This document shows, in pieces, positions 2,841-45,299 of a stretch of DNA of 64,000 nt; within the stretch, counting starts at the first letter, position 1, and each line of letters starts with the position of its first letter. Source of the stretch: Setoptus koraiensis. Lineage: Eukaryota; Animalia; Arthropoda. The stretch spans positions 9,734,001 to 9,798,000 of the forward strand of contig CM106586.1 of NCBI GenBank assembly GCA_048013815.1, given 5' to 3'. Both the position numbers and the translations under genes were made by a program. The notes under the pieces are model-generated. The model was not told the DNA's origin. It did no database searches and was given only the letters and a program-made list of their open reading frames with translations.

Positions 2841-4324
2841 TGGCGGCGCCCGACGAGGCCCGGCACGCTCTGGGAACCGCACCGACCACTGCCACGGGCT
2901 GCCCGATCTCGAACGGGCCCCGATCGAGATCGTTCATATACGTTGCAGGCAGAGGCAACGGCGGTGCGATATTTGGCGACACGCGTTCGCTCCGATGCGA
3001 TTGCTGGCTGTTTCGCACGTGCTCCTCAAACGCACTTGCCGGTCGCTGTTCATTACGCACTTGATAACAGTTGATAAACTGGCCCCGCGCTGGCTCGCCG
3101 TACCGAGCGGCGGGCCCGCCGCTCGCGGCGCTCCCAGCAACTACTGACAGTGGCTGACTAATGGCGAAAACACCAATAGCGCAAATGGCGCAACCGGGCA
3201 ACAAGCAACGGTGTAACGGGCACGTAACGCGCCCGAGTGACGAAAAAAGTGATAAAACCCGCTGACCCGTTGCACATTCGCAAATTTGCGCCTCCTTTGC
3301 CCGTTGTGCCTCTATCCTCATTTCGCCCGTTGTACCTCTATCCGCATTTTGCCGCCGCGCAATCAAGTGCCGCACCGGTCGCCGGGCCAGACTGCGCGTC
3401 AGCGACGAGCGCGGCCGGAAGTGGGTCTGCCCGTGCAGGCAGCGCTCGTCGGGCACGCGCAAATTATGTTATGTGACTCAGAGCCTTGCAATTGATGCAA
3501 TGCCCGAGTCTAGGCGCCGCATTCTTGGCGAGAATTTCTTGCATCGGTGGCACCGTCGGCACCGTATGCACCATCGGCACCGTCGGCAGCGCCGGTGCGG
3601 CCCGGACTCCGGATGGGCCTGCGACGTGAGCGGCCCCCAAAGTGAGTCTCGAGAGTCCGGGGCGGGAGTGCGCGGCGCCGACTGGCCGGCTGCCGCGCGG
3701 ATTAGATTAGCCGCTGAAAGATTCGAGCGGCCCGAATCTTTCAGCGGCTAATCTGAGTTGTAGCCGAGCTGTCGGGCGAATTCTCCCGAATGTTGCACTG
3801 GCGGGCGAATTCTCTCAAATGTTGCTCTGGCGGACGAATGGCACAAATCAATAGAATGTCGTATTAGCCGCTGACCTCTGGCGTCTTGTCGCGCGTCGCC
3901 CGAAGACGCCCCCTGGTTGCGAATGCAGCCAGCGGCTGCTTGCAATTCCGAACGACGAGCCGCCAATTTCCCGCTCAGACAAATCAAGCCGCGAGTGGGC
4001 GCCAGTTGGGGCCCCAATCGAACTGCGCAACGACAACTGCATTTGAATTCGATTTTGGGGGCCCCAAAATCGGGCCCGTTGGCGCCGACTGACATTGGCT
4101 GCCCACTCTCCAGTGTAGACTCTACACTGTAGGGTCGGTGCAGCCAGACAATGGGGCCAGCGTTGGCTTTGTGGCGCGTGATAGAGTGGCCCATAGTTTT
4201 TCAAATGGAAACCTTTGATTTATGATGCAATCACTTCTTATCTGCACAGTGTTGTTGTAGTTGTAGACACATAACACTAACTGCTGCAAATTCTTGCTTG
4301 TCTCTCTCTCTCTCTCTCTGCCAG

Positions 4325-5945: not shown

Positions 5946-8745
5946 GGCCGCCCCGACCGACCGAGCAGCGCTATAGCGAACAAAGAAGCGGAGCGCTCGC
6001 GCCAGAACTCGCCAAAGCGACGCACATCGTAGAGACCGGCGCAGAGACACTGGCAATAGATTGTATCGCTTACGTAACGATTGCGACCATTGCACCATTC
6101 ATCAATCGCGCGTTTGTTGGTGCCATCAATGGGTGTCTTGGCGCGCCGTTTTTGGCGATTCTGGTGCGGTTTGCACGCGACCACGTGACGCCTCTTGGCC
6201 CGCAAACAAGGAATACGGGGCGCACTTTTGTGTATGCGCGGCCGTTGGCCAAATGGGCCCCACAATGGCGAGACTGGCCACCATTAATCTAAATTTTCTC
6301 TGATCACTTGGCGTCTGGCACGAGCGCCAGGCCTCGTTTGGGCAACAAACACACACTATGCGCCACCAGCGGACAGGTAATATGCCAATGCGTTGCGTTG
6401 CAGCGTCGGCGGCGCCCCATTCGCCCAATCGTGTGTGTGTGTATGACATCATCAATTTCTAAGCTGGCCCCCGTTCGCGTTTGTTGTTTTGTTGTCGGCT
6501 CGTTTCGTCGTCGGCTCGCTCGGCTGTTGGCTCGCTCCGTTGTGGCTCGGTTTGTCGTTGGCCCGCTCGTTGGCTGACCATCGGCCGGCCAACGCAGAGC
6601 CAGAGAGGGGCCAGCGCAGAGCCCGGAGAGGGGCCCCGCCGACAAGACGTTGCGTGGCGATATTTATATACGTGCCATATATATTGCGGCCATAAGCAAT
6701 GGACGCTGGGCCGTGACACTCGGCGCACACAACAGACAGATAATTGAGATTACCTGGCGGGCGCCTATCGCTGGCCAGCTCACTAACTGTCTGTCGCAAG
6801 CTGCCTCGCATCGGCCATTGGTGAGATCGGTGCGATCGGTGCGAGGGGCCCCCAGATAGGTGAGAGGGGCCCCAGATAAACGGGCGCACATAAAGTTTGT
6901 TGCTGTCAGTGGGTTCGTTTGTTTGCAGCGCTAATGTGCTCGTGCGCCCGTCGCGCACACACACACACAGATATACGGCCAGATATCCGGCTAGATACAC
7001 GGCCAGATATTCTGGCGAACATATATACTGCCAAATACGCGAACAGATACACGATTCGATACGCGATTCGACGCGCAACCCAAATAGCGACCAAACAGAC
7101 ATATTACCGAGCTGACCAGCACGCAGAACAAGTGTCGCGAACCTCTTATTTAAACGACTTAATAGTTGGCGTAATGTCTCTCTCCGCGTTGACGCTGGCC
7201 TAATTTTGCATATTATGCAACCATTACTTTCTTTTTCTTACTTTTGTCGGCCCGTGCGTTTGCATTGACACACCCGCCCGAATCGGGCGGCCCCATAGAG
7301 CCGATAGAGCGCACTGTATCAACGTGTGTGTGTATCATTATGTCACTCTCGGGTTCAATCATTTCGACAGACACAAAGTTTGCGCACTCCGGCATAATAA
7401 AACGGCGCATTAACATTGAAGTGGGCCAGCCACTTGGCACGGCTAGCTTGCCGATGCAAAACAAGGTTTGAGCCGCGCCAATTCCGTGAATCCGGCCCGC
7501 GTTGTTGTTAGTCGATTTCGAACAGTTGTGCCCTCTCGCCCGTGTGCACCGCGCCGGCGCTCGGGTAGGTACGCGTGCAGTTGTGCGCGGGCCCCACAAC
7601 GCCTGTTATCGTGCCTTATATTGGCTGCGAGCTGGCGACAATTGTTGTTTAGTGTGCGCATCGCGTCGGCCAAACCGACCCGACCCGAGCCAAACCGAGC
7701 CGAACCAGACCAAACAGATATTTGTCGATGATATATATTCCTGCGTGATGGCGCCACCATTTGACACCCGCCCGCCGGCCCGGCAAGCGCGACAAAACAC
7801 TTTTGAGCCGGGCCCCAATAAGTGTCAGTTGGCATGGATTGAGGCCCGTCGCGTCTTGTTTGTGCTGGCGACGACAAAAGCGCATCACTTTCATCACGCT
7901 CACATAATGCTCACTTCAGACTCTCGCAGCCATTATCCGCCGATAAGGGCTCCTCGGCTGTTTGGGCCTCTTTTTGGCCCCCTTTCCCGCGCTATCGGCG
8001 CTGCTTTGGCTCCACTGTTTGTATCGGCGCTGCTTTGGGGCCCTCTCCTCCTCACTCACCCATTCCAAACCAAACCAACGTTGTCACTGCCGCCGCTCTG
8101 GCCCCAAAACAGCGGTGATAACGTGCCCAATTGGCCAATCGCATCTACGAGCGGCTACGACGAGCCGCCGCCACGACGTACACGCCAGAAGTAATAACAT
8201 GATCAAGACGATGTTAATACTTTTGGCGCCCGCCACTCCCGTCTCACATTACAAATCTCTGTTCGGCCGGCTGGCTCGGGCCACTTGGCGCCACTGTGCG
8301 CCAGAATTGGGGCCCCGGCCGGCGTTGAGTCAACACCTAAATCGGCGCCAAGCACAGTAAGCCAACAATGGCGCTCGCAACAACTCTTGTCGGTTGTCGG
8401 CGACGATGGCTTTCGCGCTGGCTCGTCGGAAATCCCCCAGACTTGCTGTGATAGCGGCCCCAGACTTGCTGTGATAGCGGCCCCAGCCCAGTGAGCTCAG
8501 CGACAGCTCAGTAATGAGCAGTAAAGATGGCTCGATAAAGGGCCCAAATGGTGGCCGCTCGAGAGCACATTCGGCTCTCGAGCGGCTCTTTTAAGCCGCC
8601 GGAGCCCCATTCCGGCCCATTCCCGCGCCCGTCGGCGGGGCCAGATATGGCAACTAGCGACATTAATTACGTTCTTGGCTCGTGGGCGCCTCGCAGGGCC
8701 CCGTGCCGTCGCCGCCCGCCCGCAAGCAGCTCATAATTGACTCAG

Positions 8746-9136
8746 TGCGCACACATAACTAACACTTTCTATTCCCATCTCCCGCCTGCATCTCTGCACC
8801 CTCCAAATCGCTGCACCCTCGGACTGGCTGCACCCTCGGATTCGCTGCACCGCGCGACTGGCTGCACCACCGCATTCGCTGCACCGTCCAATCGTCGGAT
8901 TCGCCCCATCGACCCAAAAAATGATCATCCCGTGGCTCGACGCAATCACCTGCGCACCGGCCCCGAAAACGCCGCCCACGCGCTACCCGCTGCATCATCA
9001 TTCATTGGGTACTTACCATATAACTGTTTGACGTACCCGTCCGCCGCACCTGTCCGGCGTTGGACTCGGTGACGCACGCAACGCGCACACAAACCAATTT
9101 GGGCCAATTCTAACTTGACGGACATAACAGGTGAGT
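8746..9136 (+). other. Candidate recursive splice site: CTAAC 8759-8763, pyrimidine tract, 383-nt AG-free zone, second CTAAC 9110-9114, then CAG|GTGAGT
   Basis: Directly read from the sequence. Same acceptor design as the real Eph exons, but the AG is immediately followed by a perfect donor. Confidence 0.5.
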
Positions 9137-10901
9137 CATTATAATAAATCTGCGTCTCTCTTTGTTGTGACTTTTTTGTCAAGCCCGCTGGCTTGCTGGC
9201 CGGCCGATCAGCTGGTTGCCAGTGGAGTCGTTGTCCGACAAACACCGGGCTTAGTGTCTACACATACGGCAATAAATGTCACGAGCCAAAGTCGACTATT
9301 AATCAGGTGCAAGCGGCTCACAAAGACAAACGCGCCGCGTCACGAGCAGTACGTGCCCGACGGGCTCATCGCGGGCCCATGCTAATATACGCGCGCGCTG
9401 CACCGGATGCTGCCGGCCGACAATGTAACAGACAAATCCGGGGCTGCTTACACTTGTCACTTGCACAGGTTGCGCAACTGGCGCAACTCGCCCAACTGGT
9501 CGGGCCCCCAAATCCCCCAACAATGCGAGCTAATCCTCGGCTCGCTGCTGCCAATTTCGGCCGGCCCGATGGCCGGCTAATTAATGATGATACCAATCGG
9601 CGTATGTGTGCCGCCAGTCATTAGCGCGCTGGGGTATTAGCCCCAAAACGGGCCGCACAACAAACCGCACACACTAACCTGAAACGTGCCCGACCATGTC
9701 TGGCAACGTGTCCACTTCCGGCCGGCAGCAGCCATGCGGGCAAACGTTGTTGTGCCGGCCGCTTTGCGTGGCGCTGTCCGTTCGTCTCGTGTTTGGTTTT
9801 GTGTTTAGTTTTGTGTTTAGTTTGCCGGGCGTTTTTCGTCGGTGCGGCCGGACGGTCCGGACCCGGCACTCCGGACTCTGGACTGCGGACCCGGGACGCC
9901 CGACTTCAGACTGCGGACTCGGGACTGCGGAGCCAGTCGTCGCAACAATATACATATCGCCGCGCATGATATTTTGGCGACTTCAGCAGCGAGTGTCACA
10001 CATTAATTAAGATTTGCTCAACAGATTAAGTGCGGCACGGGCGGCGTTAGCCGGCCCGAACGGCCGGCCAAATATCGGCCGCTCGGTCGCGTGCGCCCGT
10101 CGCTTGTTTTTGATTTTGCAGCGAGCACTCGCATTAATGGATAAATGCCGGATAATGTCGTATATTTATCCATTACTCGTGCGGGTCTTGGAGTTAGCGC
10201 GCTTACCGGCCCGCTGGCCGGTGTCTGAGTGCTGGCAATTTGCTCGCAACTCGGTGACATTAGCGGCGCCGGCGTCGTTGTCCGCAGCGACTGGCGCCCC
10301 TTATCAGGGTTACTTTGCCACGAGAGCCAAGTGAGACACATTAAGAGACACTAACTAAAAAGTTGGGCCCATTTAACTGGCCGCCGATCACTGCCAATTC
10401 GCACACGAGGGGCGCTGTTGCTGCTGGTGGGGCCCTCACCTAATGCGCACTTAATGGCGCAGTCTATTAACTAATCTATCCGTTGGCTGCAGTGTGTGCG
10501 CGCGCCCCCCAGTGCAGTTTGCATCACTCAAAGCGATGATTATGTAATGTTTATTCAGTCCGCTATTAGCGTTGGTTCACACGGCCACTATCGGCCAATG
10601 TCTAGTCATTATGTAACATTTAGTTTGGTTTAGTAACAGTTACAATACACTGAATGGCATTGTGTGTGCCATGACACCTGTCTGTTTGCTCAGTTGGGCA
10701 GTTAAATCGCGGGGCGCCGAGGGTGCGATCGCGAAACGCGGGGCCCCCGCGACACGTCGACATATATTTATATATACGATGTATAAGTGTGCAAAGTTTG
10801 CCACGTGTTTGCAGCTTTCGCAAAGTGTCAGCGAGTGTGAGAAGAGCCGCTACAAAACTGGACCAGTCAATAATTTGCCTACGCGCACTGTGCCCGTTTG
10901 C

Positions 10902-24500: not shown

Positions 24501-25793
24501 TTTGTATGTTTTTGTGCGTATTTTTGTTGTTTGCCTCTGTGTCTGGCCGGCTCAGGTGAGACTCGGGTGAACCGCTCAGGTGAGACGCTCGGGCGAGACT
24601 CGAGCGAGACTCGGGCGAAACGCGGCTGAGACTCGGGTGAACCGCTCAGGTGAGACGCTCGGGTGAGAGATTAGCAAATATCCGGCAACGATCGCCGGCC
24701 GGATCGGCAAGCCGGGCAACAAGTGCCAGTGGTCACAGCATTCCCATGGCGCCAATCGGCCGATTGCGGTGTCCGTGCATCGGCCGGCAATGTATTAGTG
24801 GCAATAATCACTGTAATGACCAAGTGAGTGAGTGTTTGCAACAAGCGCAACAAGTGCGACCAGCGCAACTAGCCGCCGAGCCACTTTGGCCACTTTGGCC
24901 ACTCGCAAGAGTGGCCAAAGTGCAAGTGGCCGGCAAGCGAGCAATCAAACGCAATGTTGTAATGCTGTTTAGCTGTTGGGCCTAGGAAGAGCGCACTGGG
25001 ATGTCGCATTAGCAAATAATAAATTCAAACGGCCAATGCCAATTTAAATTGCCCATCGGCCGTCGACATATCATGTCTAGTGCCTGTTGGCATGTGCCAA
25101 TGCCTTTCAACATGCGACTGGCATAATATAACTTTTACCTTTCCAGTTATATCATCACACATCAGCTTGTGTTATGAAGCTAAAAAGTTGACCACTGGTC
25201 GAATTGCCGGCTGGAAGCGCAAATGATACCGGTAAACAAATGATAAATAATCAACTCTCATTAGCCGCTCTCTCGTTTCGTCTGTTCAACAGACTCTGAT
25301 TGTTATCGTCGTATTATTGTTGTCGTATTATTGTTGGCGTGTTATTGTTGGCGTCGCAGAGCCAACATGATGGCGCAAACGATAACGGAAATGATAGATT
25401 GTTTGCTTGTGGGAGTCGACGAGTGATTGATGGCGCGTCCGACTGTCCGACTGTTCGACTGTCCGACAGCGCAAACGCAAACAATGCAACTCGGCGCCCC
25501 TCAAATCGACGGTCTCAAATCGACAGTTTTGAATCGACAGTCTCAAATCGAGAGTCTCAAATTGACAGTCCCAAATTGACAGTCTCAATGCCCGTCTGAA
25601 TCAGCTGACCGATGGCAGCTCTGTGATCGACAACATCGGCGGCCCCATTAGCCTCATCGTACATATTCCATCTATCTCATATCTAGCCCATGTTAGCATC
25701 GTAATACGATGCGTCGTATGCGTCACTATCTCGGCCCCACTAACCTCGTCCAATCTTGTCGCCCCATGTGCAATTATGCGCGCCATTATTCAG

Positions 25794-25873
25794 TCATCCT
25801 TTTGGACACCACAACCCAGGACTCGCTCGACTGGACCCATCACCCCAGCGGAACGTCGTCGCGCACCCAGGGC
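25794..25873 (+). CDS. Eph: Eph receptor, first resolved coding exon (start of ephrin-binding domain, (V/I)ILLDTTTQDSLDWTHHPSGTSSRTQG)
   Basis: CACTAAC branch point 25738-25744, first downstream AG is CAG 25791-25793, donor GTAAGT at 25874. Phase 1 to 0, in frame with the next exon. Matches the Eph N-terminal VxLLDT...L.W motif. Confidence 0.88.
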
Positions 25874-26084
25874 GTAAGTATACCTTTCACAGCTGATTTC
25901 GCTGCGAGCTCTCTCGTGTCCCGTGTTGACATGTGTCAGGCTTGTGTCAGGCGCCGGTCAGCTGACTCGTGACAAGCTCTGTCGAGTGCGACACGTGACA
26001 AGCGCCGGTCAGCCGACTCGTGTCGTTGCTAATTGTCAGCTGTTGCTCTCTAATAACTCTCTCCCTCTCTCGCTCTCAAATGAA

Positions 26085-26168
26085 TATCAAATCAACATCA
26101 AATCACCGTCAAATCAACATCAAATCACCGTCAAATCAACATCAAATCACCGTCAAATCACCGTCAAA
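26085..26168. repeat. 22-bp AG-free tandem repeat (AAATCAACATCAAATCACCGTC) between the pyrimidine tract and the acceptor of the LBD exon
   Basis: About 3.5 copies. Confidence 0.9.
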
Positions 26169-26186
26169 CTGTTGCGTCACCCGCAG

Positions 26187-26907
26187 TGGATCGAGGAGTC
26201 TTTCACAAACTTTGAGAGCGGCATCAATTGGCGCACCTTCGTCGTGTGCGACGTCGCCCACAAGAGCGTCAACAATTGGCTTTGGACACCCTACATAGAG
26301 CGCGGAAACGCCAACCGTCTCTACATAGAGATCCGCTTTTCTATGCGCGATTGCAACCTGTTTCCGGGCACCGCGCTGTCGTGCAAGGAAACCTTTTCGC
26401 TGCTGTACAAAGAATTGGATCAGCCCGTGCACGCCACTGCCCAGCAGCAGCAGCAACCCGACGCCGGCGCCGCCGCCGCAAGTGCCTCATCGTCGAGCGG
26501 CCAAACGGACAGTTACACCCTTATCGATACCATTGCCGCCGACGAGGGTAGATTTTCCGTCAACAAAGAGGTCATCATAAACACAGAAATCCGCTCTATA
26601 CCCGTCACCAAGCGGGGCGTTTATTTTGCCATCCGCGATCAGGGCGCCTGCCTGTCGTTGATCTCAATAAAAGTGTATCACATTCAGTGTCCGCCGGTCA
26701 CCTCGTCGTTTGCCTATTTCAACGTGACGCCCACGGGCAAGGATCTCACATCGCTGGTACAAGTGGAGGGCAAATGCGTCGACAATGCCCAGCCCGTTGA
26801 CCAGCCCCGGCTCATATGCCAGTCGGACGGAAACTGGACCATCATGTCGGGCGGCCAGTGCAAGTGTCTGCCCGGCTACGAGCCCGACGCCCAGTCCGCG
26901 TGTCAAG
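26187..26907 (+). CDS. Eph: Eph exon: ligand-binding domain and start of Cys-rich region (WIEESFTNF...CKCLPGYEPDAQSACQ)
   Basis: Within ORF 25923-27023. Motifs NWLWTPYIER, RDCNLFPG, CKETFSLLY, DTIAADE, GVYFAIRDQGAC. Acceptor CAG 26184-26186, donor GTGAGT 26908. Phase 0 to 1. Confidence 0.97.
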
Positions 26908-30727: not shown

Positions 30728-30862
30728 CGACAACAACGACAACCGACAACAACGACAACCGCGGACGACCACGGCGCATCTCGGCAAACTCGACAACAAC
30801 AACAACAACGACAACAACAACGACAACAACATCAACGACGACGACGGCGACGACAACAACTG
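30728..30862. repeat. (CAA/CGA)n array inside the 302-nt AG-free zone of the FN3-2/TM exon acceptor
   Basis: Directly visible. Confidence 0.9.
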
Positions 30863-30967: not shown

Positions 30968-31993
30968 CGACGAGCGTGCCCAGTCTGCCCCCGCAATCGC
31001 CAGTGATAAACGTGCGCCTACTGAGCGGGGCGCGCAACACCGACATTGTGCTTACGTGGGACGTTATGACAACATCGACACTTGTTAACTCGGCCCAGTC
31101 ACAACTGACAGTTGACAATAGAAGCAGCAGCCCAACAACCACGGCAACAACAGCAACAACAACAACAACAGCCACAGCACTGCAACAACTGCAATCAGCT
31201 GAGCCCGTCTTGTACGAGGTCAAGTATTATCCGCGTTACGCAATATCCGCTGTCAACGGCCAACAACAACAACAGCAACTACCTACTGCCAACAATGCAT
31301 TGCATCATCAGTATCTGAGGCAGGCGCCCACGCAACAACAACAGCAACAACAACAGCAACAACCACTGAACAGTCAGTATTCGCAGGCGCCCATGAGCAT
31401 CACAACAATGGCCAAAACTGTTGCCATTAGCGACCTCAGGCCGCGCGTCGAATATTCGTTTCAAATTCGCGCCAAACTGCCCAACGGCATCTGGTCCAAT
31501 TATACCGAACCCATTCATGAGTCCGTTATACGCGTCAACAGCCTATTGTGGGACACTGCCACGCCCAACAACAACCCGTACACCGCGGGTATGCCCGGCG
31601 ACCCAGCACTGCAGGGCACTGCAACTAATGTTCAGCTAAAACAGCAATACCCGACGCCCGCAAGCGGCGCCACCGCCTGGTTAAGTAGTTTGTTGTTGAT
31701 AATAATAGTGGTGATTGTGTTGGCGGTGTCACTGTTGGCCTACGTCCAATACCGCAAGAACATGTGCATGAACAACGCCTTCGGTACCCTGAGCGCGTAC
31801 GGCGTGTACGGGAGCGGCGCCAGCGCCATAGTGGCCAACGGGGCCACGCTGGCCGGACACACGGGCCAATCGCGGGTGCAAAACTTCATATCGGCCACCG
31901 TGGGCGCGGGCAAGAACAACAGCAAGCTGCGCCACTATCACCAGACCATGATACACCAGGACGACATGTTCAAGTACCGCACCACCAACCAAG
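30968..31993 (+). CDS. Eph: Eph exon: second FN3 domain with low-complexity inserts, stalk, transmembrane helix (LLLIIIVVIVLAVSLLAYV) and proximal juxtamembrane region
   Basis: Within ORF 30976-32139. LYEVKYYP and ISDLRPRVEYSFQIRA FN3 motifs, a 20-aa hydrophobic span. CAG 30965-30967 after a 302-nt AG-free zone, GTGAGT 31994, phase 1 to 1. Confidence 0.92.
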
Positions 31994-35248: not shown

Positions 35249-35314
35249 CCAATCTGGTGAACCTTTCGTCGTCCTCGTCAGAGTGCACACCCATCATGTC
35301 CAGCTCGTCTCGCT
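35249..35314 (+). CDS. Eph: Eph 66-nt juxtamembrane exon (ANLVNLSSSSSECTPIMSSSSR)
   Basis: CAG 35246-35248 after a 378-nt AG-free zone, perfect GTAAGT at 35315, symmetric phase 1 to 1, open frame. ECTPIM resembles the TTPLF-type juxtamembrane motif I recall from insect Eph. Confidence 0.8.
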
Positions 35315-37135: not shown

Positions 37136-38929
37136 GTAAGTAGCGGTTGCGGGCCGCGAACCGGCAACTCGGTCGGGCCGGCGTCCGCCGGTATCCGTGG
37201 AGCGCGCAAGTCCAGGGCTGGATTGCGGCTGAGCTACGGCTCAACTATGACTGAATCATGGCTGAATTAGGGCTGAATTATGGCTGAATTATGGCGAGCG
37301 AGCGACGTGTCAGCGAGCGAGAGAGGGAGCGAAAAGTCGATATTTGAAGGCCAGCGCCGAGTATCAGCGATCACTTTCCGAGCCGATGATTGATTCGTCT
37401 GGCTGCCGTCGGAACGGGCCAGCGCTGAGAGTGTGTAATAATATGATAATATGAGGGCCTTAAAACGAGGCCGTATACACAAGCGTCGAGTTGTGGCATT
37501 TAATAAATTAAATAAAGAGTTGGTCGAGTTAGCGGGCTAATTAATCACTGGCAACTTAGCAGCGGAGCAGCGCCAAGTAGTGAGAAGGCGCCGTTGAGTC
37601 GTGCCCTGTTTGTTTCGCTGGCTGCCAACTGCGCTTCATTAATAATGATGATAACTGGGCCGCTTGCGATGATTATATGTGGCTATGTGATTATATAATA
37701 TTATTATTGTCTTTATGGCAATTCTCTATGAGTATCACACTCACAAGAGTTGTCAGACTGGAGTCGCAAGAGCACAATATCCGCACCGAGTGAGCGATTA
37801 TTATGTATTAGCGTCGTTGGAGATTGTGAAAATTGAATCCGTGTGAGCAAACAAACAGCAGCGATAATGAGCGCCAACTATTGAACTGAATGAATCATGA
37901 TCCAGATTTGCGAAACTCCAATTCGCGAGCGCACCAAACTTGACGATTGATCATTTTCGTTGTCAAAAGCAACAGCCAACGAACGCTGCCAGCAGCGGAG
38001 ATAGCGATGAGATAGCAGCAATGAGGAAGCAATTTTGCATATTCCAGCACACACAAATATGACGAGACGCTGCCGTTGTATCGGCGGCGTTGCATCGGCG
38101 GCGTTGTATCGGCGGCGTTGCTGTATCGGGAGTCGGCCGTCGCTGTTGTTGCGTAACCGCCGGCGAGCGAGATATCAATAAATTATTATTTGAACTGGCT
38201 AACGAGCCACTAACGAGCTCGTCGTGTCTCGCCGCGGCCGCCGACGCTGCCGATGCCGTTGACGCTGTTGATGCCGTTGACGCTGTTGCGTCAGCGGTCG
38301 GCCGCTGCGGGCCCGGAGACTGGCATGATGCGAGGCGGCCCTTCGGGCCGGTTGAGTTATGAGTGGCGCGGCGCGCTCCGGCGGCCGCATGAGCTCGCCG
38401 ATTGCGCCGAGTGCGACGCTCGCTGCCGGTCGCGGCTCATGAGCCCGCCGCAGCAAGCGGCCAGATACAGAGATGCGGAGATAGGGCGACGGGCGATGCG
38501 GAGATACGGCTCTGTGCAGAAGCAGCGACGCAAAGTTGCGGGGACGCGGAGACGCAACGATGCGGAGATGCCCAGATAAAGCGATGCGCTCGCCATTAAT
38601 ATTCATAATCACACCATTAGTCAGCGCAATTTAATTTAAGCCGCACTTGATCGCGATTTAGCGATGCTCCGGCCGACAGTGTGGCCGACAGTGCGGCCGA
38701 CAAGTGCCGCACCGGCCGAGCGCCGCCGGACAGCGCCGAAGCGGGCCTAATCTGGATTAAAAAGTCGCTCATTAGCGCTCATCAGCGCGGCCCTGTTGCG
38801 CCTGTGGCGCAAATTGAGCGGCGTGTGCGGCCCAAATCAATTATCGCTAGACGAGCCAGATGAGTAACTCTTTGTTTGTTCAATATCCATCAATTGTCAC
38901 AACGACAACGACGACGACGACGACAACAG

Positions 38930-39183
38930 GTGAATTCGGAGACGTTTGCAGGGGCCGGCTGCGCAGGCCCGAGCTGAGCGGCGCCGAGACCACGGTGGCC
39001 ATCAAGACGCTGAAACAGGGAGCCAGCGACAAGAACCGGCTCGACTTTCTCACCGAGGCATCCACCATGGGCCAGTTCGACCACCCGAACGTCATTTACC
39101 TCGAGGGCGTTGTGACGCGAACCAATCCCGTTATGATAGTGACCGAATTCATGGAAAACGGCGCCTTGGACGCATTTCTCAGG
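38930..39183 (+). CDS. Eph: Eph exon: kinase N-lobe (GEFGDVCRG...VAIKTLK...[17 protein letters not shown])
   Basis: CAG 38927-38929, GTAAGT 39184, phase 1 to 0. Gly-rich loop, VAIK lysine, alphaC FLTEAS, Thr gatekeeper. Confidence 0.98.
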
Positions 39184-39480: not shown

Positions 39481-39579
39481 GGCAACAAGGGCCGCTTCCC
39501 GGTGCCCCAATTGTTGTCCATGCTCCGGGGCATAGCGTGCGGAATGAAATACCTGTCCGAAATGAATTACGTGCACAGG
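39481..39579 (+). CDS. Eph: Eph exon: kinase alphaE to catalytic loop ([33 protein letters not shown])
   Basis: CAG 39478-39480, GTAAGT 39580, 99 nt, phase 0 to 0. Confidence 0.97.
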
Positions 39580-44396: not shown

Positions 44397-44708
44397 GACC
44401 TGGCCGCCAGAAACATCTTGGTGAACGCCAACAACGTGTGCAAGATAGCCGACTTTGGTTTGTCGCGCGAAATTGAGACCGCGCACGACGGCACGGGCGC
44501 GTACACAACGCGCGGCGGCAAAATACCCGTCCGATGGACCGCGCTCGAGGCGATCGCCTTCAGAAAGTTCACCTCGGCCAGCGACGTCTGGAGCTTCGGC
44601 ATCGTCTGCTGGGAGGTGATGTCCTACGGAGAGCGGCCCTACTCGCAGTGGTCCAACCAGAACGTCATCAAGGCCGTCGAGCAGGGCTACCGCCTGCTGG
44701 CCCCCGAG
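44397..44708 (+). CDS. Eph: Eph exon: catalytic and activation loops (DLAARNILV...DFGLSR...[18 protein letters not shown]...GYRLLAPE)
   Basis: CAG 44394-44396, GTAAGT 44709, 312 nt, phase 0 to 0. HR|DLAARN, DFG, SDVWSFG motifs. Confidence 0.98.
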
Positions 44709-44996
44709 GTAAGTGCACCCGTCAACCGCCCGCCCGTTTTAGCGTCGACCGAGCGGCCCGTTTTAGAGTCGACCGTGCGGACGGCGGTCGCCCGACGCCC
44801 GACAAACGGTCGCACAATTGTTATTTTGTTATTAATTCCCGTTCCCGTCTCTCCCGTTTCTCCCGTTTGTTCCCATCGCCGCGACAACCACCGCGCAACC
44901 GTGTGACCGCTCAATTAAACGCACTCACAATCAAACAATCAAATACCCTCGCAATTAAATACCCTCGCAATTAAATACCCGCGCAATCAAATACAG

Positions 44997-45157
44997 GGCT
45001 GCCCAGAGGCCGTGCACAAGCTGATGCTCGACTGCTGGCTCAAGGACCGCTCGGCGCGCCCGTCGTTCGCGCAAATAGTTAAGACGTTCGACCGTCTCAT
45101 TAGTCCATACGATGCCTGTGATGATAAACTGAGCGCCACCATGACGCAACACACCAG
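44997..45157 (+). CDS. Eph: Eph exon: kinase C-lobe end ([35 protein letters not shown]...QHT)
   Basis: CAG 44994-44996, GTGAGT 45158, phase 0 to 2. CP...LMLDCW...RP.F motif. Absent from the + ORF track. Confidence 0.95.
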
Positions 45158-45299
45158 GTGAGTTTGAATTTGGTGAATTTACTGAATTGGCTGCATAAAA
45201 TCGCGGCGAGAGTCTCGCCCTTTTCTGCCCCGTCCGCTCGTTTCTGCCCCGTCCGCTCGCTTCTGCCCGTCCCCTCGCCGTTTCACCTGTGCGAACGCT

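What the first reader, a model, noticed from the sequence alone, without database searches (positions are those of the whole stretch)
8746..9148. Candidate recursive splice site (ratchet point) in the 25-kb region upstream of the Eph coding exons
Seen: from 8746 to 9128 the + strand has no AG dinucleotide (383 nt, the longest such run I found). The run opens with CTAAC (8759) plus a pyrimidine tract, contains an 18-bp-period GCTGCACC repeat and a second CTAAC (9110), and ends in CAG|GTGAGT (9128-9136). The next two longest runs I found (378 and 302 nt) both end at true Eph exons. Known: in Drosophila and vertebrate long introns, a 3' splice site directly abutting a 5' splice site (AG|GTRAGT) marks recursive splicing. 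Inference: this is a functional acceptor that regenerates a donor after splicing. That would make the upstream 25 kb a long Eph intron removed stepwise, which I am not aware has been described in this kind of arthropod.
Basis: partly seen in the sequence, partly recalled or inferred. Interest (0 to 1): 0.78.

Follow-up and report, generated by a model that had tools for sequence, protein, structure and literature searches.

The report
Candidate recursive splice site, mite Eph
In a mite's Eph receptor gene, an "end-of-intron" signal built like the gene's real ones sits directly against a "start-of-intron" signal in the middle of a predicted 41-kb intron, so the intron is probably removed in two steps, but no RNA data could be consulted.

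Summary
The + strand has no AG from 8746 to 9128, the longest such run in 344 kb of this genome apart from one 5.7-kb run. The depletion is specific to AG: 0 seen, 16.5 expected, and the other 15 dinucleotides are normal.

The run opens with ACTAAC plus a pyrimidine tract and ends in CAG|GTGAGT. Ten verified or likely Eph acceptors in this window are built the same way, with AG-free gaps of 65-380 nt and no pyrimidine tract next to the AG.

I found a likely Eph exon 1 15.3 kb upstream of the window. It has a signal peptide, an AGG|GTAAGT donor and the right phase. This makes intron 1 41.1 kb, and the site splits it into 24.5 and 16.7 kb. No coding exon can end at 9130 or start at 9131.

Best reading (about 0.5): a zero-length recursive splice site with this mite's distant-branch-point acceptor. 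Main rival: a cryptic last exon, because AATAAA follows 12 nt downstream.

The scan flagged similar sites before on other DNA of this genome (s1-314234). One of them shares the full layout, AATAAA included.

The parts
8744..8745 (+). Last AG before the AG-free run. It lies inside TCAGT (8742-8746), which also resembles an arthropod initiator.
8758..8763 (+). Distal branch-point-like ACTAAC (branch A at 8762), 15 nt after the opening AG and 368 nt before the closing AG
   Evidence: Only 4 sites on + and 2 on - in 64 kb have CTAAY followed by at least 73% pyrimidine.
8764..8804 (+). Pyrimidine tract that follows the distal branch point (80% C/T in the first 30 nt)
8746..9128 (+). AG exclusion zone of 383 nt with no AG
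8790..8886 (+). AG-free tandem repeat inside the zone: period 17 (34), about 5.6 copies, core GCTGCACC
9110..9114 (+). Proximal CTAAC (A at 9113), 17 nt before the G of the AG. A possible second branch point with no pyrimidine tract after it.
9128..9130 (+). CAG, the candidate 3' splice site. It is the first AG after the distal branch point.
9131..9136 (+). GTGAGT, a consensus 5' splice site directly after the AG. After the first step the junction would read AAGG|GTGAGT.
   Evidence: Eph donors in the window are GTRAGT.
9143..9148 (+). AATAAA 12 nt after the junction, overlapping in-frame TAA TAA stops and followed by a T/GT-rich stretch (9149-9180). A possible poly(A) signal.
25794..25873 (+). 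Eph exon 2 (VILLDTT...). It starts in phase 1 and needs a G from the exon before it.
26187..26907 (+). Eph exon 3 (ligand-binding domain and cysteine-rich domain)

Best explanation
The site at 9130|9131 is a zero-length recursive splice site (ratchet point) in intron 1 of the Eph receptor gene.

Shown from sequence:
- A branch-point-like ACTAAC and a pyrimidine tract sit at 8758-8804.
- From there to 9128 no AG occurs.
- The first AG (9129-9130) is followed at once by GTGAGT.
- True Eph acceptors in this window have the same layout.

Inferred:
- Transcription starts about 16 kb upstream of the window at a predicted exon 1 (window -15582 to -15330, L008:4418-4670).
- The exon 1 donor AGG|GTAAGT is first spliced to the AG at 9130, which removes 24,460 nt.
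- This recreates a donor, AAGG|GTGAGT.
- That donor is then spliced to exon 2 at 25794, which removes the remaining 16,663 nt.
- The spliceosome would commit at the distal branch point and pyrimidine tract and use the first AG downstream. That explains why selection has kept AG out of 383 nt.
For: 1. The AG-free run is extreme and AG-specific. Runs of 300 nt or more are absent from 200 kb of control strand.
2. Long AG-free runs mark acceptors on the sense strand here. Ten verified or likely Eph acceptors have gaps of 65-380 nt. Of the runs of at least 100 nt on the Eph + strand, 7 of 26 have CTAAY in the first 45 nt, and 5 of those 7 are verified exon starts. On the - strand it is 0 of 13.
3. 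The candidate has the best CTAAC-plus-pyrimidine-tract start of any run in the region.
4. Only 0.088% of AGs are followed by GTRAGT (30 of 34,048). The candidate is the only one among 26 runs of 200 nt or more.
5. The predicted exon 1 has a classic signal peptide, a consensus donor and phase 1 with G, which gives the conserved V of VILLDTT. Its reading frame stops 2 codons past the donor. It lies at the left edge of a GC-rich domain that spans -16 kb to +53 kb.
6. The ten largest ORFs of the intron have no Pfam hit, and window 1-26000 has no Rfam hit.
7. A coding exon cannot end at 9130: there is an in-frame TGA at 9070-9072 and no ATG after it. Nor can one start at 9131: in phase 1 there is a stop after 4 codons.
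8. Cryptic recursive exons in flies are likewise out of frame (PMC8605326).
Against: - No RNA-seq, lariat or RT-PCR data were reachable, and no related genome for conservation.
- Exon 1 is a prediction only.
- The immediate upstream sequence is purine-rich, and positions -6/-5 are TA. In Drosophila 99.5% of ratchet points have TT there.
- The Drosophila-type motif Y9NYAG|GTRAGT occurs twice in the whole genome against 6 for the control.
- CTAAC N8-30 CAG|GTRAGT is only 1.75 times its control. So recursive splicing is not shown to be a general habit of this genome.
- There is no good downstream donor to define a recursive exon. The best is CAG|GTGCAA at 9307.
- AATAAA at +13 fits a terminal exon.
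Confidence: 0.5

Rival explanations
1. Cryptic or alternative last exon. The acceptor at 9130 is real, but it leads into a tiny terminal exon: G-E-S-L, then TAA TAA, then AATAAA at 9143 and a T/GT-rich downstream element. This would give a short exon-1-only transcript. GTGAGT would then act as a U1 binding site that normally suppresses this poly(A) site, or it would be there by chance.
For: - AATAAA lies 12 nt after the junction and a T/GT-rich stretch follows.
- The base rate of AATAAA at +7 to +30 after GTRAGT is 6 of 286. The only two AG|GTRAGT sites of 30 that have it are the two with the longest AG-free runs.
- Cryptic last exons in long introns are a known class, including one in zebrafish epha4b (PMC7997972).
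Against: - Typical cryptic last exons have no 5' splice site at their first base.
- The product would encode only a signal peptide plus about 59 residues.
- CAGGTRAGT N3-8 AATAAA is barely enriched genome-wide: 8 matches against a control of 2, with about 4-5 expected.
- It is not shown that AATAAA is the poly(A) signal used in this mite.
Confidence: 0.17
2. No splicing role. The AG-free tract is a by-product of tandem repeats or of a regulatory element of the Eph locus, and AG|GTGAGT is a coincidence.
For: - A 17-nt tandem repeat fills about 100 nt of the run.
- The region carries many repeats.
- There is no transcript evidence, and no predicted RNA structure (z = +0.63).
Against: Without the repeat, P(no AG) is still 2.7e-6. 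Three independent low-probability features coincide: the run itself, CTAAC plus a pyrimidine tract within 15 nt of its start (about 0.2%), and GTRAGT at its end (0.09%). The - strand shows nothing similar.
Confidence: 0.13
3. Donor of a non-coding alternative first exon. Transcription would start near the initiator-like TCAGT at 8742-8746, and the 387-nt exon would be spliced from 9130 to exon 2.
For: - TCAGT lies exactly at the start of the run.
- CAG|GTGAGT is a perfect donor.
- The G at 9130 would give the V codon of VILLDTT.
Against: - Such an mRNA has no start codon or signal peptide in frame: TGA at 9070-9072 and no ATG after it. The receptor could then not be secreted.
- An exon has no known reason to exclude AG.
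- The real 5' region of exon 1 is rich in AG.
Confidence: 0.1
4. Ordinary acceptor of a poison cassette exon, or of an unannotated + strand non-coding RNA nested in the intron. The exon would start at 9131, and GTGAGT would be there by chance.
For: The acceptor architecture is strong. A weak donor, CAG|GTGCAA, lies at 9307, which would make a 176-nt exon.
Against: The chance of GTRAGT right after an AG is about 0.09%. There is no strong donor within 300 nt. ORFs after 9131 have no Pfam hit.
Confidence: 0.1

Closest known systems
Zero-nucleotide recursive splice sites (ratchet points) of Drosophila long introns (Ubx, kuz and others; bioRxiv 10.1101/006163; PMC8605326)
   Same: A 3' splice site directly abuts a 5' splice site (AG|GTRAGT) inside the longest intron of a neural and developmental gene. 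The piece downstream is out of frame or stops at once. The intron is cut into comparable pieces (24.5 and 16.7 kb).
   Different: There is no pyrimidine tract next to the AG, and -6/-5 is TA, not TT. The branch point and tract lie 368 nt upstream, with an AG-free zone between them. No clear downstream donor defines a recursive exon. AATAAA follows the site. No RNA evidence. The host is a mite (chelicerate), for which I found no report.
AG exclusion zones with distant branch points (my own knowledge: human alternatively spliced exons, Gooding et al. 2006; first-AG scanning from the branch point)
   Same: A consensus branch point with an adjacent pyrimidine tract, then a long stretch with no AG, then the first AG used as acceptor. 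This is the layout of the true Eph acceptors in the window.
   Different: Here it seems to be the norm for a whole gene (gaps of 65-380 nt). Elsewhere in the genome it reaches 5.7 kb. The zones are often filled with AG-free tandem repeats.
Cryptic last exons in long introns (SFPQ-repressed; zebrafish epha4b; PMC7997972)
   Same: An acceptor followed closely by AATAAA inside a long intron of an Eph-family gene.
   Different: Those exons have no 5' splice site at their first base, and they encode a ligand-binding fragment. Here only the signal peptide and about 59 residues would be made.
U1 snRNP suppression of nearby poly(A) sites (telescripting; my own knowledge, mentioned in PMC7997972)
   Same: A strong U1-type site lies 6 nt upstream of an AATAAA.
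   Different: Telescripting sites are not known to coincide with a functional 3' splice site.

Membership tests
Zero-nucleotide recursive splice site (ratchet point) | Juxtaposed acceptor and donor, AG|GTRAGT | tested here: met
   CAG|GTGAGT at 9128-9136
Zero-nucleotide recursive splice site (ratchet point) | Lies on the sense strand inside a long intron of a host gene | tested here: inconclusive
   Predicted exon 1 at window -15582 to -15330 gives a 41,123-nt intron 1. The GC-rich domain matches this unit. No embedded genes were found. Exon 1 is not confirmed by RNA or homology.
Zero-nucleotide recursive splice site (ratchet point) | Prominent pyrimidine tract next to the AG, with TT at -5/-6 (99.5% of fly ratchet points) | tested here: not met
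   The sequence is ...gacggacataacag|, with TA at -6/-5. True Eph acceptors of this mite also lack a proximal tract, so this may be a species difference.
Zero-nucleotide recursive splice site (ratchet point) | Junction reads to and from the site, saw-tooth coverage, lariats | not testable with these tools
Records of the window's own genome are left out of the collections.
Zero-nucleotide recursive splice site (ratchet point) | Strong conservation of the AG|GT core between species | not testable with these tools
   The genome has no relatives in the collections. The best Eph relative is 66% identical at protein level. The 23-mer core has no match in metagenome contigs.
Zero-nucleotide recursive splice site (ratchet point) | Cryptic recursive exon: downstream piece out of frame, with a weaker donor | tested here: inconclusive
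   In phase 1 a stop comes after 4 codons. The only donor-like site within 300 nt is CAG|GTGCAA at 9307.
Distant-branch-point acceptor with AG exclusion zone | Branch-point consensus with a pyrimidine tract at the start of an AG-free stretch, and the first AG as acceptor | tested here: met
   ACTAAC plus an 80% pyrimidine tract 15 nt after the opening AG, then 368 nt to the first AG. Exons at 26187, 30968, 37022, 39481 and 44397 have the same layout.
Cryptic or alternative last exon | Acceptor followed by a stop codon and a poly(A) signal with a downstream U/GU-rich element | tested here: inconclusive
   TAA TAA, AATAAA at 9143-9148 and T/GT-rich 9149-9180 are all present. Cleavage there is untested.
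First exon with donor | Transcription start upstream, and a usable reading frame into exon 2 | tested here: not met
   The frame that leads into exon 2 has TGA at 9070-9072 and no ATG after it. The start itself is not testable.

The most novel reading that the evidence does not exclude
This mite defines 3' splice sites by a distal branch point plus pyrimidine tract and then scans to the first AG over hundreds to thousands of nucleotides. Its giant introns carry a special ratchet element built on that rule: CTAAC and tract, an AG-free zone, CAG|GTRAGT, then AATAAA a few bases on. The poly(A) signal would help define the zero-length exon in the way a terminal exon is defined. The regenerated U1 site would silence it, so that failed re-splicing ends the transcript.
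Probability: 0.15. Interest if true: 0.8.

Novelty: new member of a known kind. Interest (0 to 1): 0.52.

Why it matters
Recursive splicing is documented in flies and vertebrates, and I found no report for mites or other chelicerates. A mite with a 49-Mb genome and only a few giant introns would be a simple system in which to ask why some long introns need a ratchet.

This site also lacks the local pyrimidine tract that marks fly ratchet points. It relies on a branch point 368 nt away, so it would show that the ratchet principle works with a different way of choosing the 3' splice site. The AATAAA next to it, shared with a second candidate, hints at a link between re-splicing and premature termination that can be tested directly.

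Tried and rejected
Steps that led nowhere or were not possible:
- The word search with Eph exon 3 gave no relative above 66% identity, so no same-species protein or transcript fragment.
Exons were handled one by one by reference.
- The 23-mer core in metagenome contigs gave 0 hits.
- RNA folds of the AG-free zone and of two true Eph zones showed no unusual structure (z = +0.5 to +0.7). A fold that brings the branch point near the AG is therefore not supported.
- ORFs in and around the site, and the ten largest ORFs of the intron, gave no Pfam hit. Window 1-26000 gave no Rfam hit.
- A scan for a signal-peptide exon inside 1-25793 found no convincing candidate. The only good one lies upstream of the window.
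- The Drosophila-type ratchet motif is not enriched genome-wide. CTAAC near CAG|GTRAGT is only weakly enriched.
I did not try to read those places by other means.
- A bacterial-type promoter scan at exon 1 is not informative for an animal.

Readings considered and rejected:
- The site is not part of a repeat family. It is single-copy in the genome.
- The region is not a - strand gene. The - strand ORFs are short and have no Pfam hit.

Full report
**Where the window lies.** The window is G000:C2:9734001-9798000 of a 48.8-Mb assembly in two contigs. Earlier notes of this scan call the animal a mite. It carries an Eph receptor gene on the + strand:
- the ligand-binding and cysteine-rich domains in exon 3, 26187-26907;
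- FN3 and the transmembrane helix in 30968-31993;
- kinase exons at 38930-39183, 39481-39579, 44397-44708 and 44997-45157.

TAF2 (+) and a Shc-like gene (-) follow at 58.8-63.6 kb.

AG occurs at 8744 and next at 9129, so 8746-9128 (383 nt) has no AG.
- It is the longest such run in the window. The - strand maximum is 198.
- The run has ordinary amounts of A (83) and G (76). Fifteen dinucleotides are at 0.64-1.44 of expectation, and AG alone is 0 against 16.5 expected.
- The chance of this from composition is about 7e-8. None of 200,000 shuffles was AG-free. Leaving out the 17-nt tandem repeat (8790-8886), it is still 2.7e-6.
- Ten 10-kb pieces spread over the other contig have no run of 300 or more on either strand (maximum 236).
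- In all 344 kb I could read (688 kb of strand), only five runs reach 300: 5701, 385, 380, 309 and 304.

Long AG-free runs are therefore rare in this genome.

**Long AG-free runs mark true acceptors on the sense strand.** In 144 kb around the gene, the + strand has seven runs of 200 nt or more, all inside the Eph unit. The - strand has none. Ten verified or likely Eph acceptors have AG-free gaps of 97, 147, 125, 304, 380, 182, 65, 182, 129 and 228 nt, against a mean AG spacing of about 20 nt. Their last 15 nt are A/C-rich, not pyrimidine-rich.

The branch-point-like CTAAC or CTAAT with a pyrimidine tract sits instead at the start of the run:
- 0-38 nt after the opening AG for the exons at 26187, 30968, 37022, 39481 and 44397;
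- among + strand runs of at least 100 nt in the coding part of the gene, 7 of 26 have CTAAY in the first 45 nt, and five of those seven are verified exon starts; on the - strand it is 0 of 13;
- the 5.7-kb AG-free run noted by the scan elsewhere (s1-362429) is real, opens with ACTAAAT plus a strong pyrimidine tract, and ends at caacag|GACCTG.

The simplest reading is that this spliceosome commits at the branch point and tract and takes the first AG downstream. This is an inference. RNA folding gives no sign of a structure that shortens the distance (z = +0.5 to +0.7).

**The candidate fits this architecture at the extreme end.** ACTAAC (8758-8763) comes 15 nt after the opening AG. An 80% pyrimidine stretch follows. 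The first AG is 368 nt further on. Only four + strand and two - strand sites in 64 kb have CTAAY followed by at least 73% pyrimidine. A second CTAAC lies 17 nt before the AG.

Right after the AG comes GTGAGT, the form of the Eph donors seen here (GTRAGT). Only 30 of 34,048 AGs in my sample are followed by GTRAGT (0.088%). Of 26 runs of 200 nt or more, the candidate is the only one.

**The host intron.** Exon 2 (25794-25873) starts in phase 1 and needs a G to make the conserved V of VILLDTT. No convincing signal-peptide exon lies in 1-25793. In 80 kb fetched upstream, the best candidate by far is at window -15582 to -15330 (L008:4418-4670):
- it has a Kozak-like gccaacATGG;
- it encodes MAAPIQKLLLLPAAAMLVALIASTLTLAQ..., 84 codons plus G|GTAAGT;
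- the open frame stops two codons after the donor.

It sits at the left edge of a sharply bounded domain of 54-60% GC and high CpG. The domain runs from about -16 kb to +53 kb, with about 40% GC on both sides, so it covers the predicted Eph unit. That makes intron 1 41,123 nt, and the site divides it into 24,460 and 16,663 nt. The ten largest ORFs of the intron have no Pfam match, and window 1-26000 has no Rfam match. The 701 nt around the site are single-copy in the genome. Exon 1 is a prediction. Nothing here tests it with RNA.

**Coding exons are excluded on both sides.** The frame that would run from 9130 into exon 2 has TGA at 9070-9072 and no ATG after it. An exon starting at 9131 in phase 1 reads G-E-S-L and stops. 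This argues for a zero-length exon, or for a piece that must not reach the mRNA. That is how cryptic recursive exons behave in flies (PMC8605326).

**Points against.**
- Fly ratchet points have a strong adjacent pyrimidine tract and TT at -5/-6 in 99.5% of cases. Here it is TA in a purine-rich context.
- The fly-type motif Y9NYAG|GTRAGT occurs only twice in the genome, against 6 for the control.
- CTAAC N8-30 CAG|GTRAGT occurs 49 times against 28. A genome-wide class is not shown.
- No good downstream donor exists. The best is CAG|GTGCAA at 9307.
- I had no RNA data and no related genome.

**An unexpected feature.** AATAAA lies at 9143-9148, overlapping the two in-frame TAA codons and followed by a T/GT-rich stretch.

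The scan's earlier recursive candidate in another GC-rich giant stretch (s1-314234) includes a site at C2:14081184, - strand. That site has the same layout: CTAAC plus a pyrimidine tract 24 nt after the opening AG, a 103-nt AG-free run, CAG|GTAAGT, and AATAAA at +11. Further counts:
- Of 30 AG|GTRAGT sites sampled, only these two have AATAAA within +7 to +30, and they are the two with the longest AG-free runs. The base rate is 6 of 286.
- Genome-wide, CAGGTRAGT N3-8 AATAAA has just eight matches, and these two are among them.
- A third look-alike, at C2:14070820 (- strand), has ACTAAC and tract, 309 nt AG-free and CAG|GTACGT, but no AATAAA.

This keeps open a cryptic-last-exon reading, a class known from long introns including zebrafish epha4b (PMC7997972). 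It also allows a hybrid in which a U1-type site guards a poly(A) signal.

**Verdict.** A working acceptor at 9130 is very likely, if the + strand is transcribed there. Given an acceptor, a GTGAGT at its first base is far better explained by re-splicing than by chance. I put recursive splicing at about 0.5, a cryptic last exon at 0.17, no function at 0.13, an alternative first exon at 0.10 and another kind of exon at 0.10.

It is a new member of a known kind, in a lineage and with an acceptor style not described for ratchet points.

Noticed in passing
window 1-53000 and upstream to -16000 (L008-L009): A sharply bounded domain of 54-60% GC with CpG observed/expected of 1.2-1.5 covers the predicted Eph unit, from -16 kb to +53 kb. 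Both flanks are about 40% GC with CpG o/e of 0.8-0.95. The other giant gene-poor stretch, C2:14.065-14.145 Mb, is GC-rich too.
   Followed up: partly
window 9143-9180; L010:6184 (C2:14081184, - strand): AATAAA follows the AG|GTRAGT junction by 10-12 nt at both this site and the earlier recursive candidate of note s1-314234. Genome-wide, CAGGTRAGT N3-8 AATAAA has only 8 matches. The six others are C1:537718-, C1:8449636+, C1:17277641-, C1:19600420+, C1:24045881+ and C2:5048693-. They could not be inspected.
   Followed up: partly
L016:5820 (C2:14070820, - strand): A 309-nt AG-free run opens with ACTAAC plus a pyrimidine tract 6 nt after the opening AG and ends in CAG|GTACGT. It lies 10.4 kb downstream, on the same strand, of the earlier candidate at 14081184. 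It may be a further ratchet-like site of that giant stretch.
   Followed up: partly
window 4277-4321: CACTAAC, a CT-rich tract and CAG|AGAGTC form a classic compact acceptor-like site inside the predicted intron 1. The piece after it is not frame-compatible with Eph: 166 nt to caa|GTGAGC, which ends in phase 2.
   Followed up: partly
L008:4418-4670 (window -15582 to -15330): The predicted Eph exon 1 encodes a signal peptide and then about 55 residues rich in His, Gln and Asn. These contain a dibasic RYKR motif ahead of the ligand-binding domain, which is an unusual N-terminal extension for an Eph receptor.
   Followed up: no
window 26080-26170, 30730-30860, 44930-44995, 45215-45280: The AG-free zones before true Eph exons are largely filled with AG-free tandem repeats (caaatcaMC, GACAACAAC, aaatacccgcgcaat and others). 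The zones seem to grow by repeat expansion that is tolerated as long as no AG arises.
   Followed up: no
window 35249-35314: A 66-nt, frame-preserving, stop-free exon lies between the transmembrane exon and the juxtamembrane exon, behind a 380-nt AG-free run. Skipping it also keeps the frame, so it may be a cassette exon.
   Followed up: no
window 24540-24660: A tandem repeat whose units each contain gctcag|GTGAGAC gives three AG|GTGAGA sites just 1.2 kb before exon 2. The first has a 145-nt AG-free run.
   Followed up: no
window 8435-8486: A perfect 23-nt tandem repeat (CCCCAGACTTGCTGTGATAGCGG, 2.3 copies) lies 260 nt upstream of the AG-free zone.
   Followed up: no
window 38923-38936: The real kinase exon starts acaacag|GTGAAT (codons GGT GAA). 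A true exon can therefore begin with a donor-like GTGA, which is a caution for motif-only calls.
   Followed up: yes
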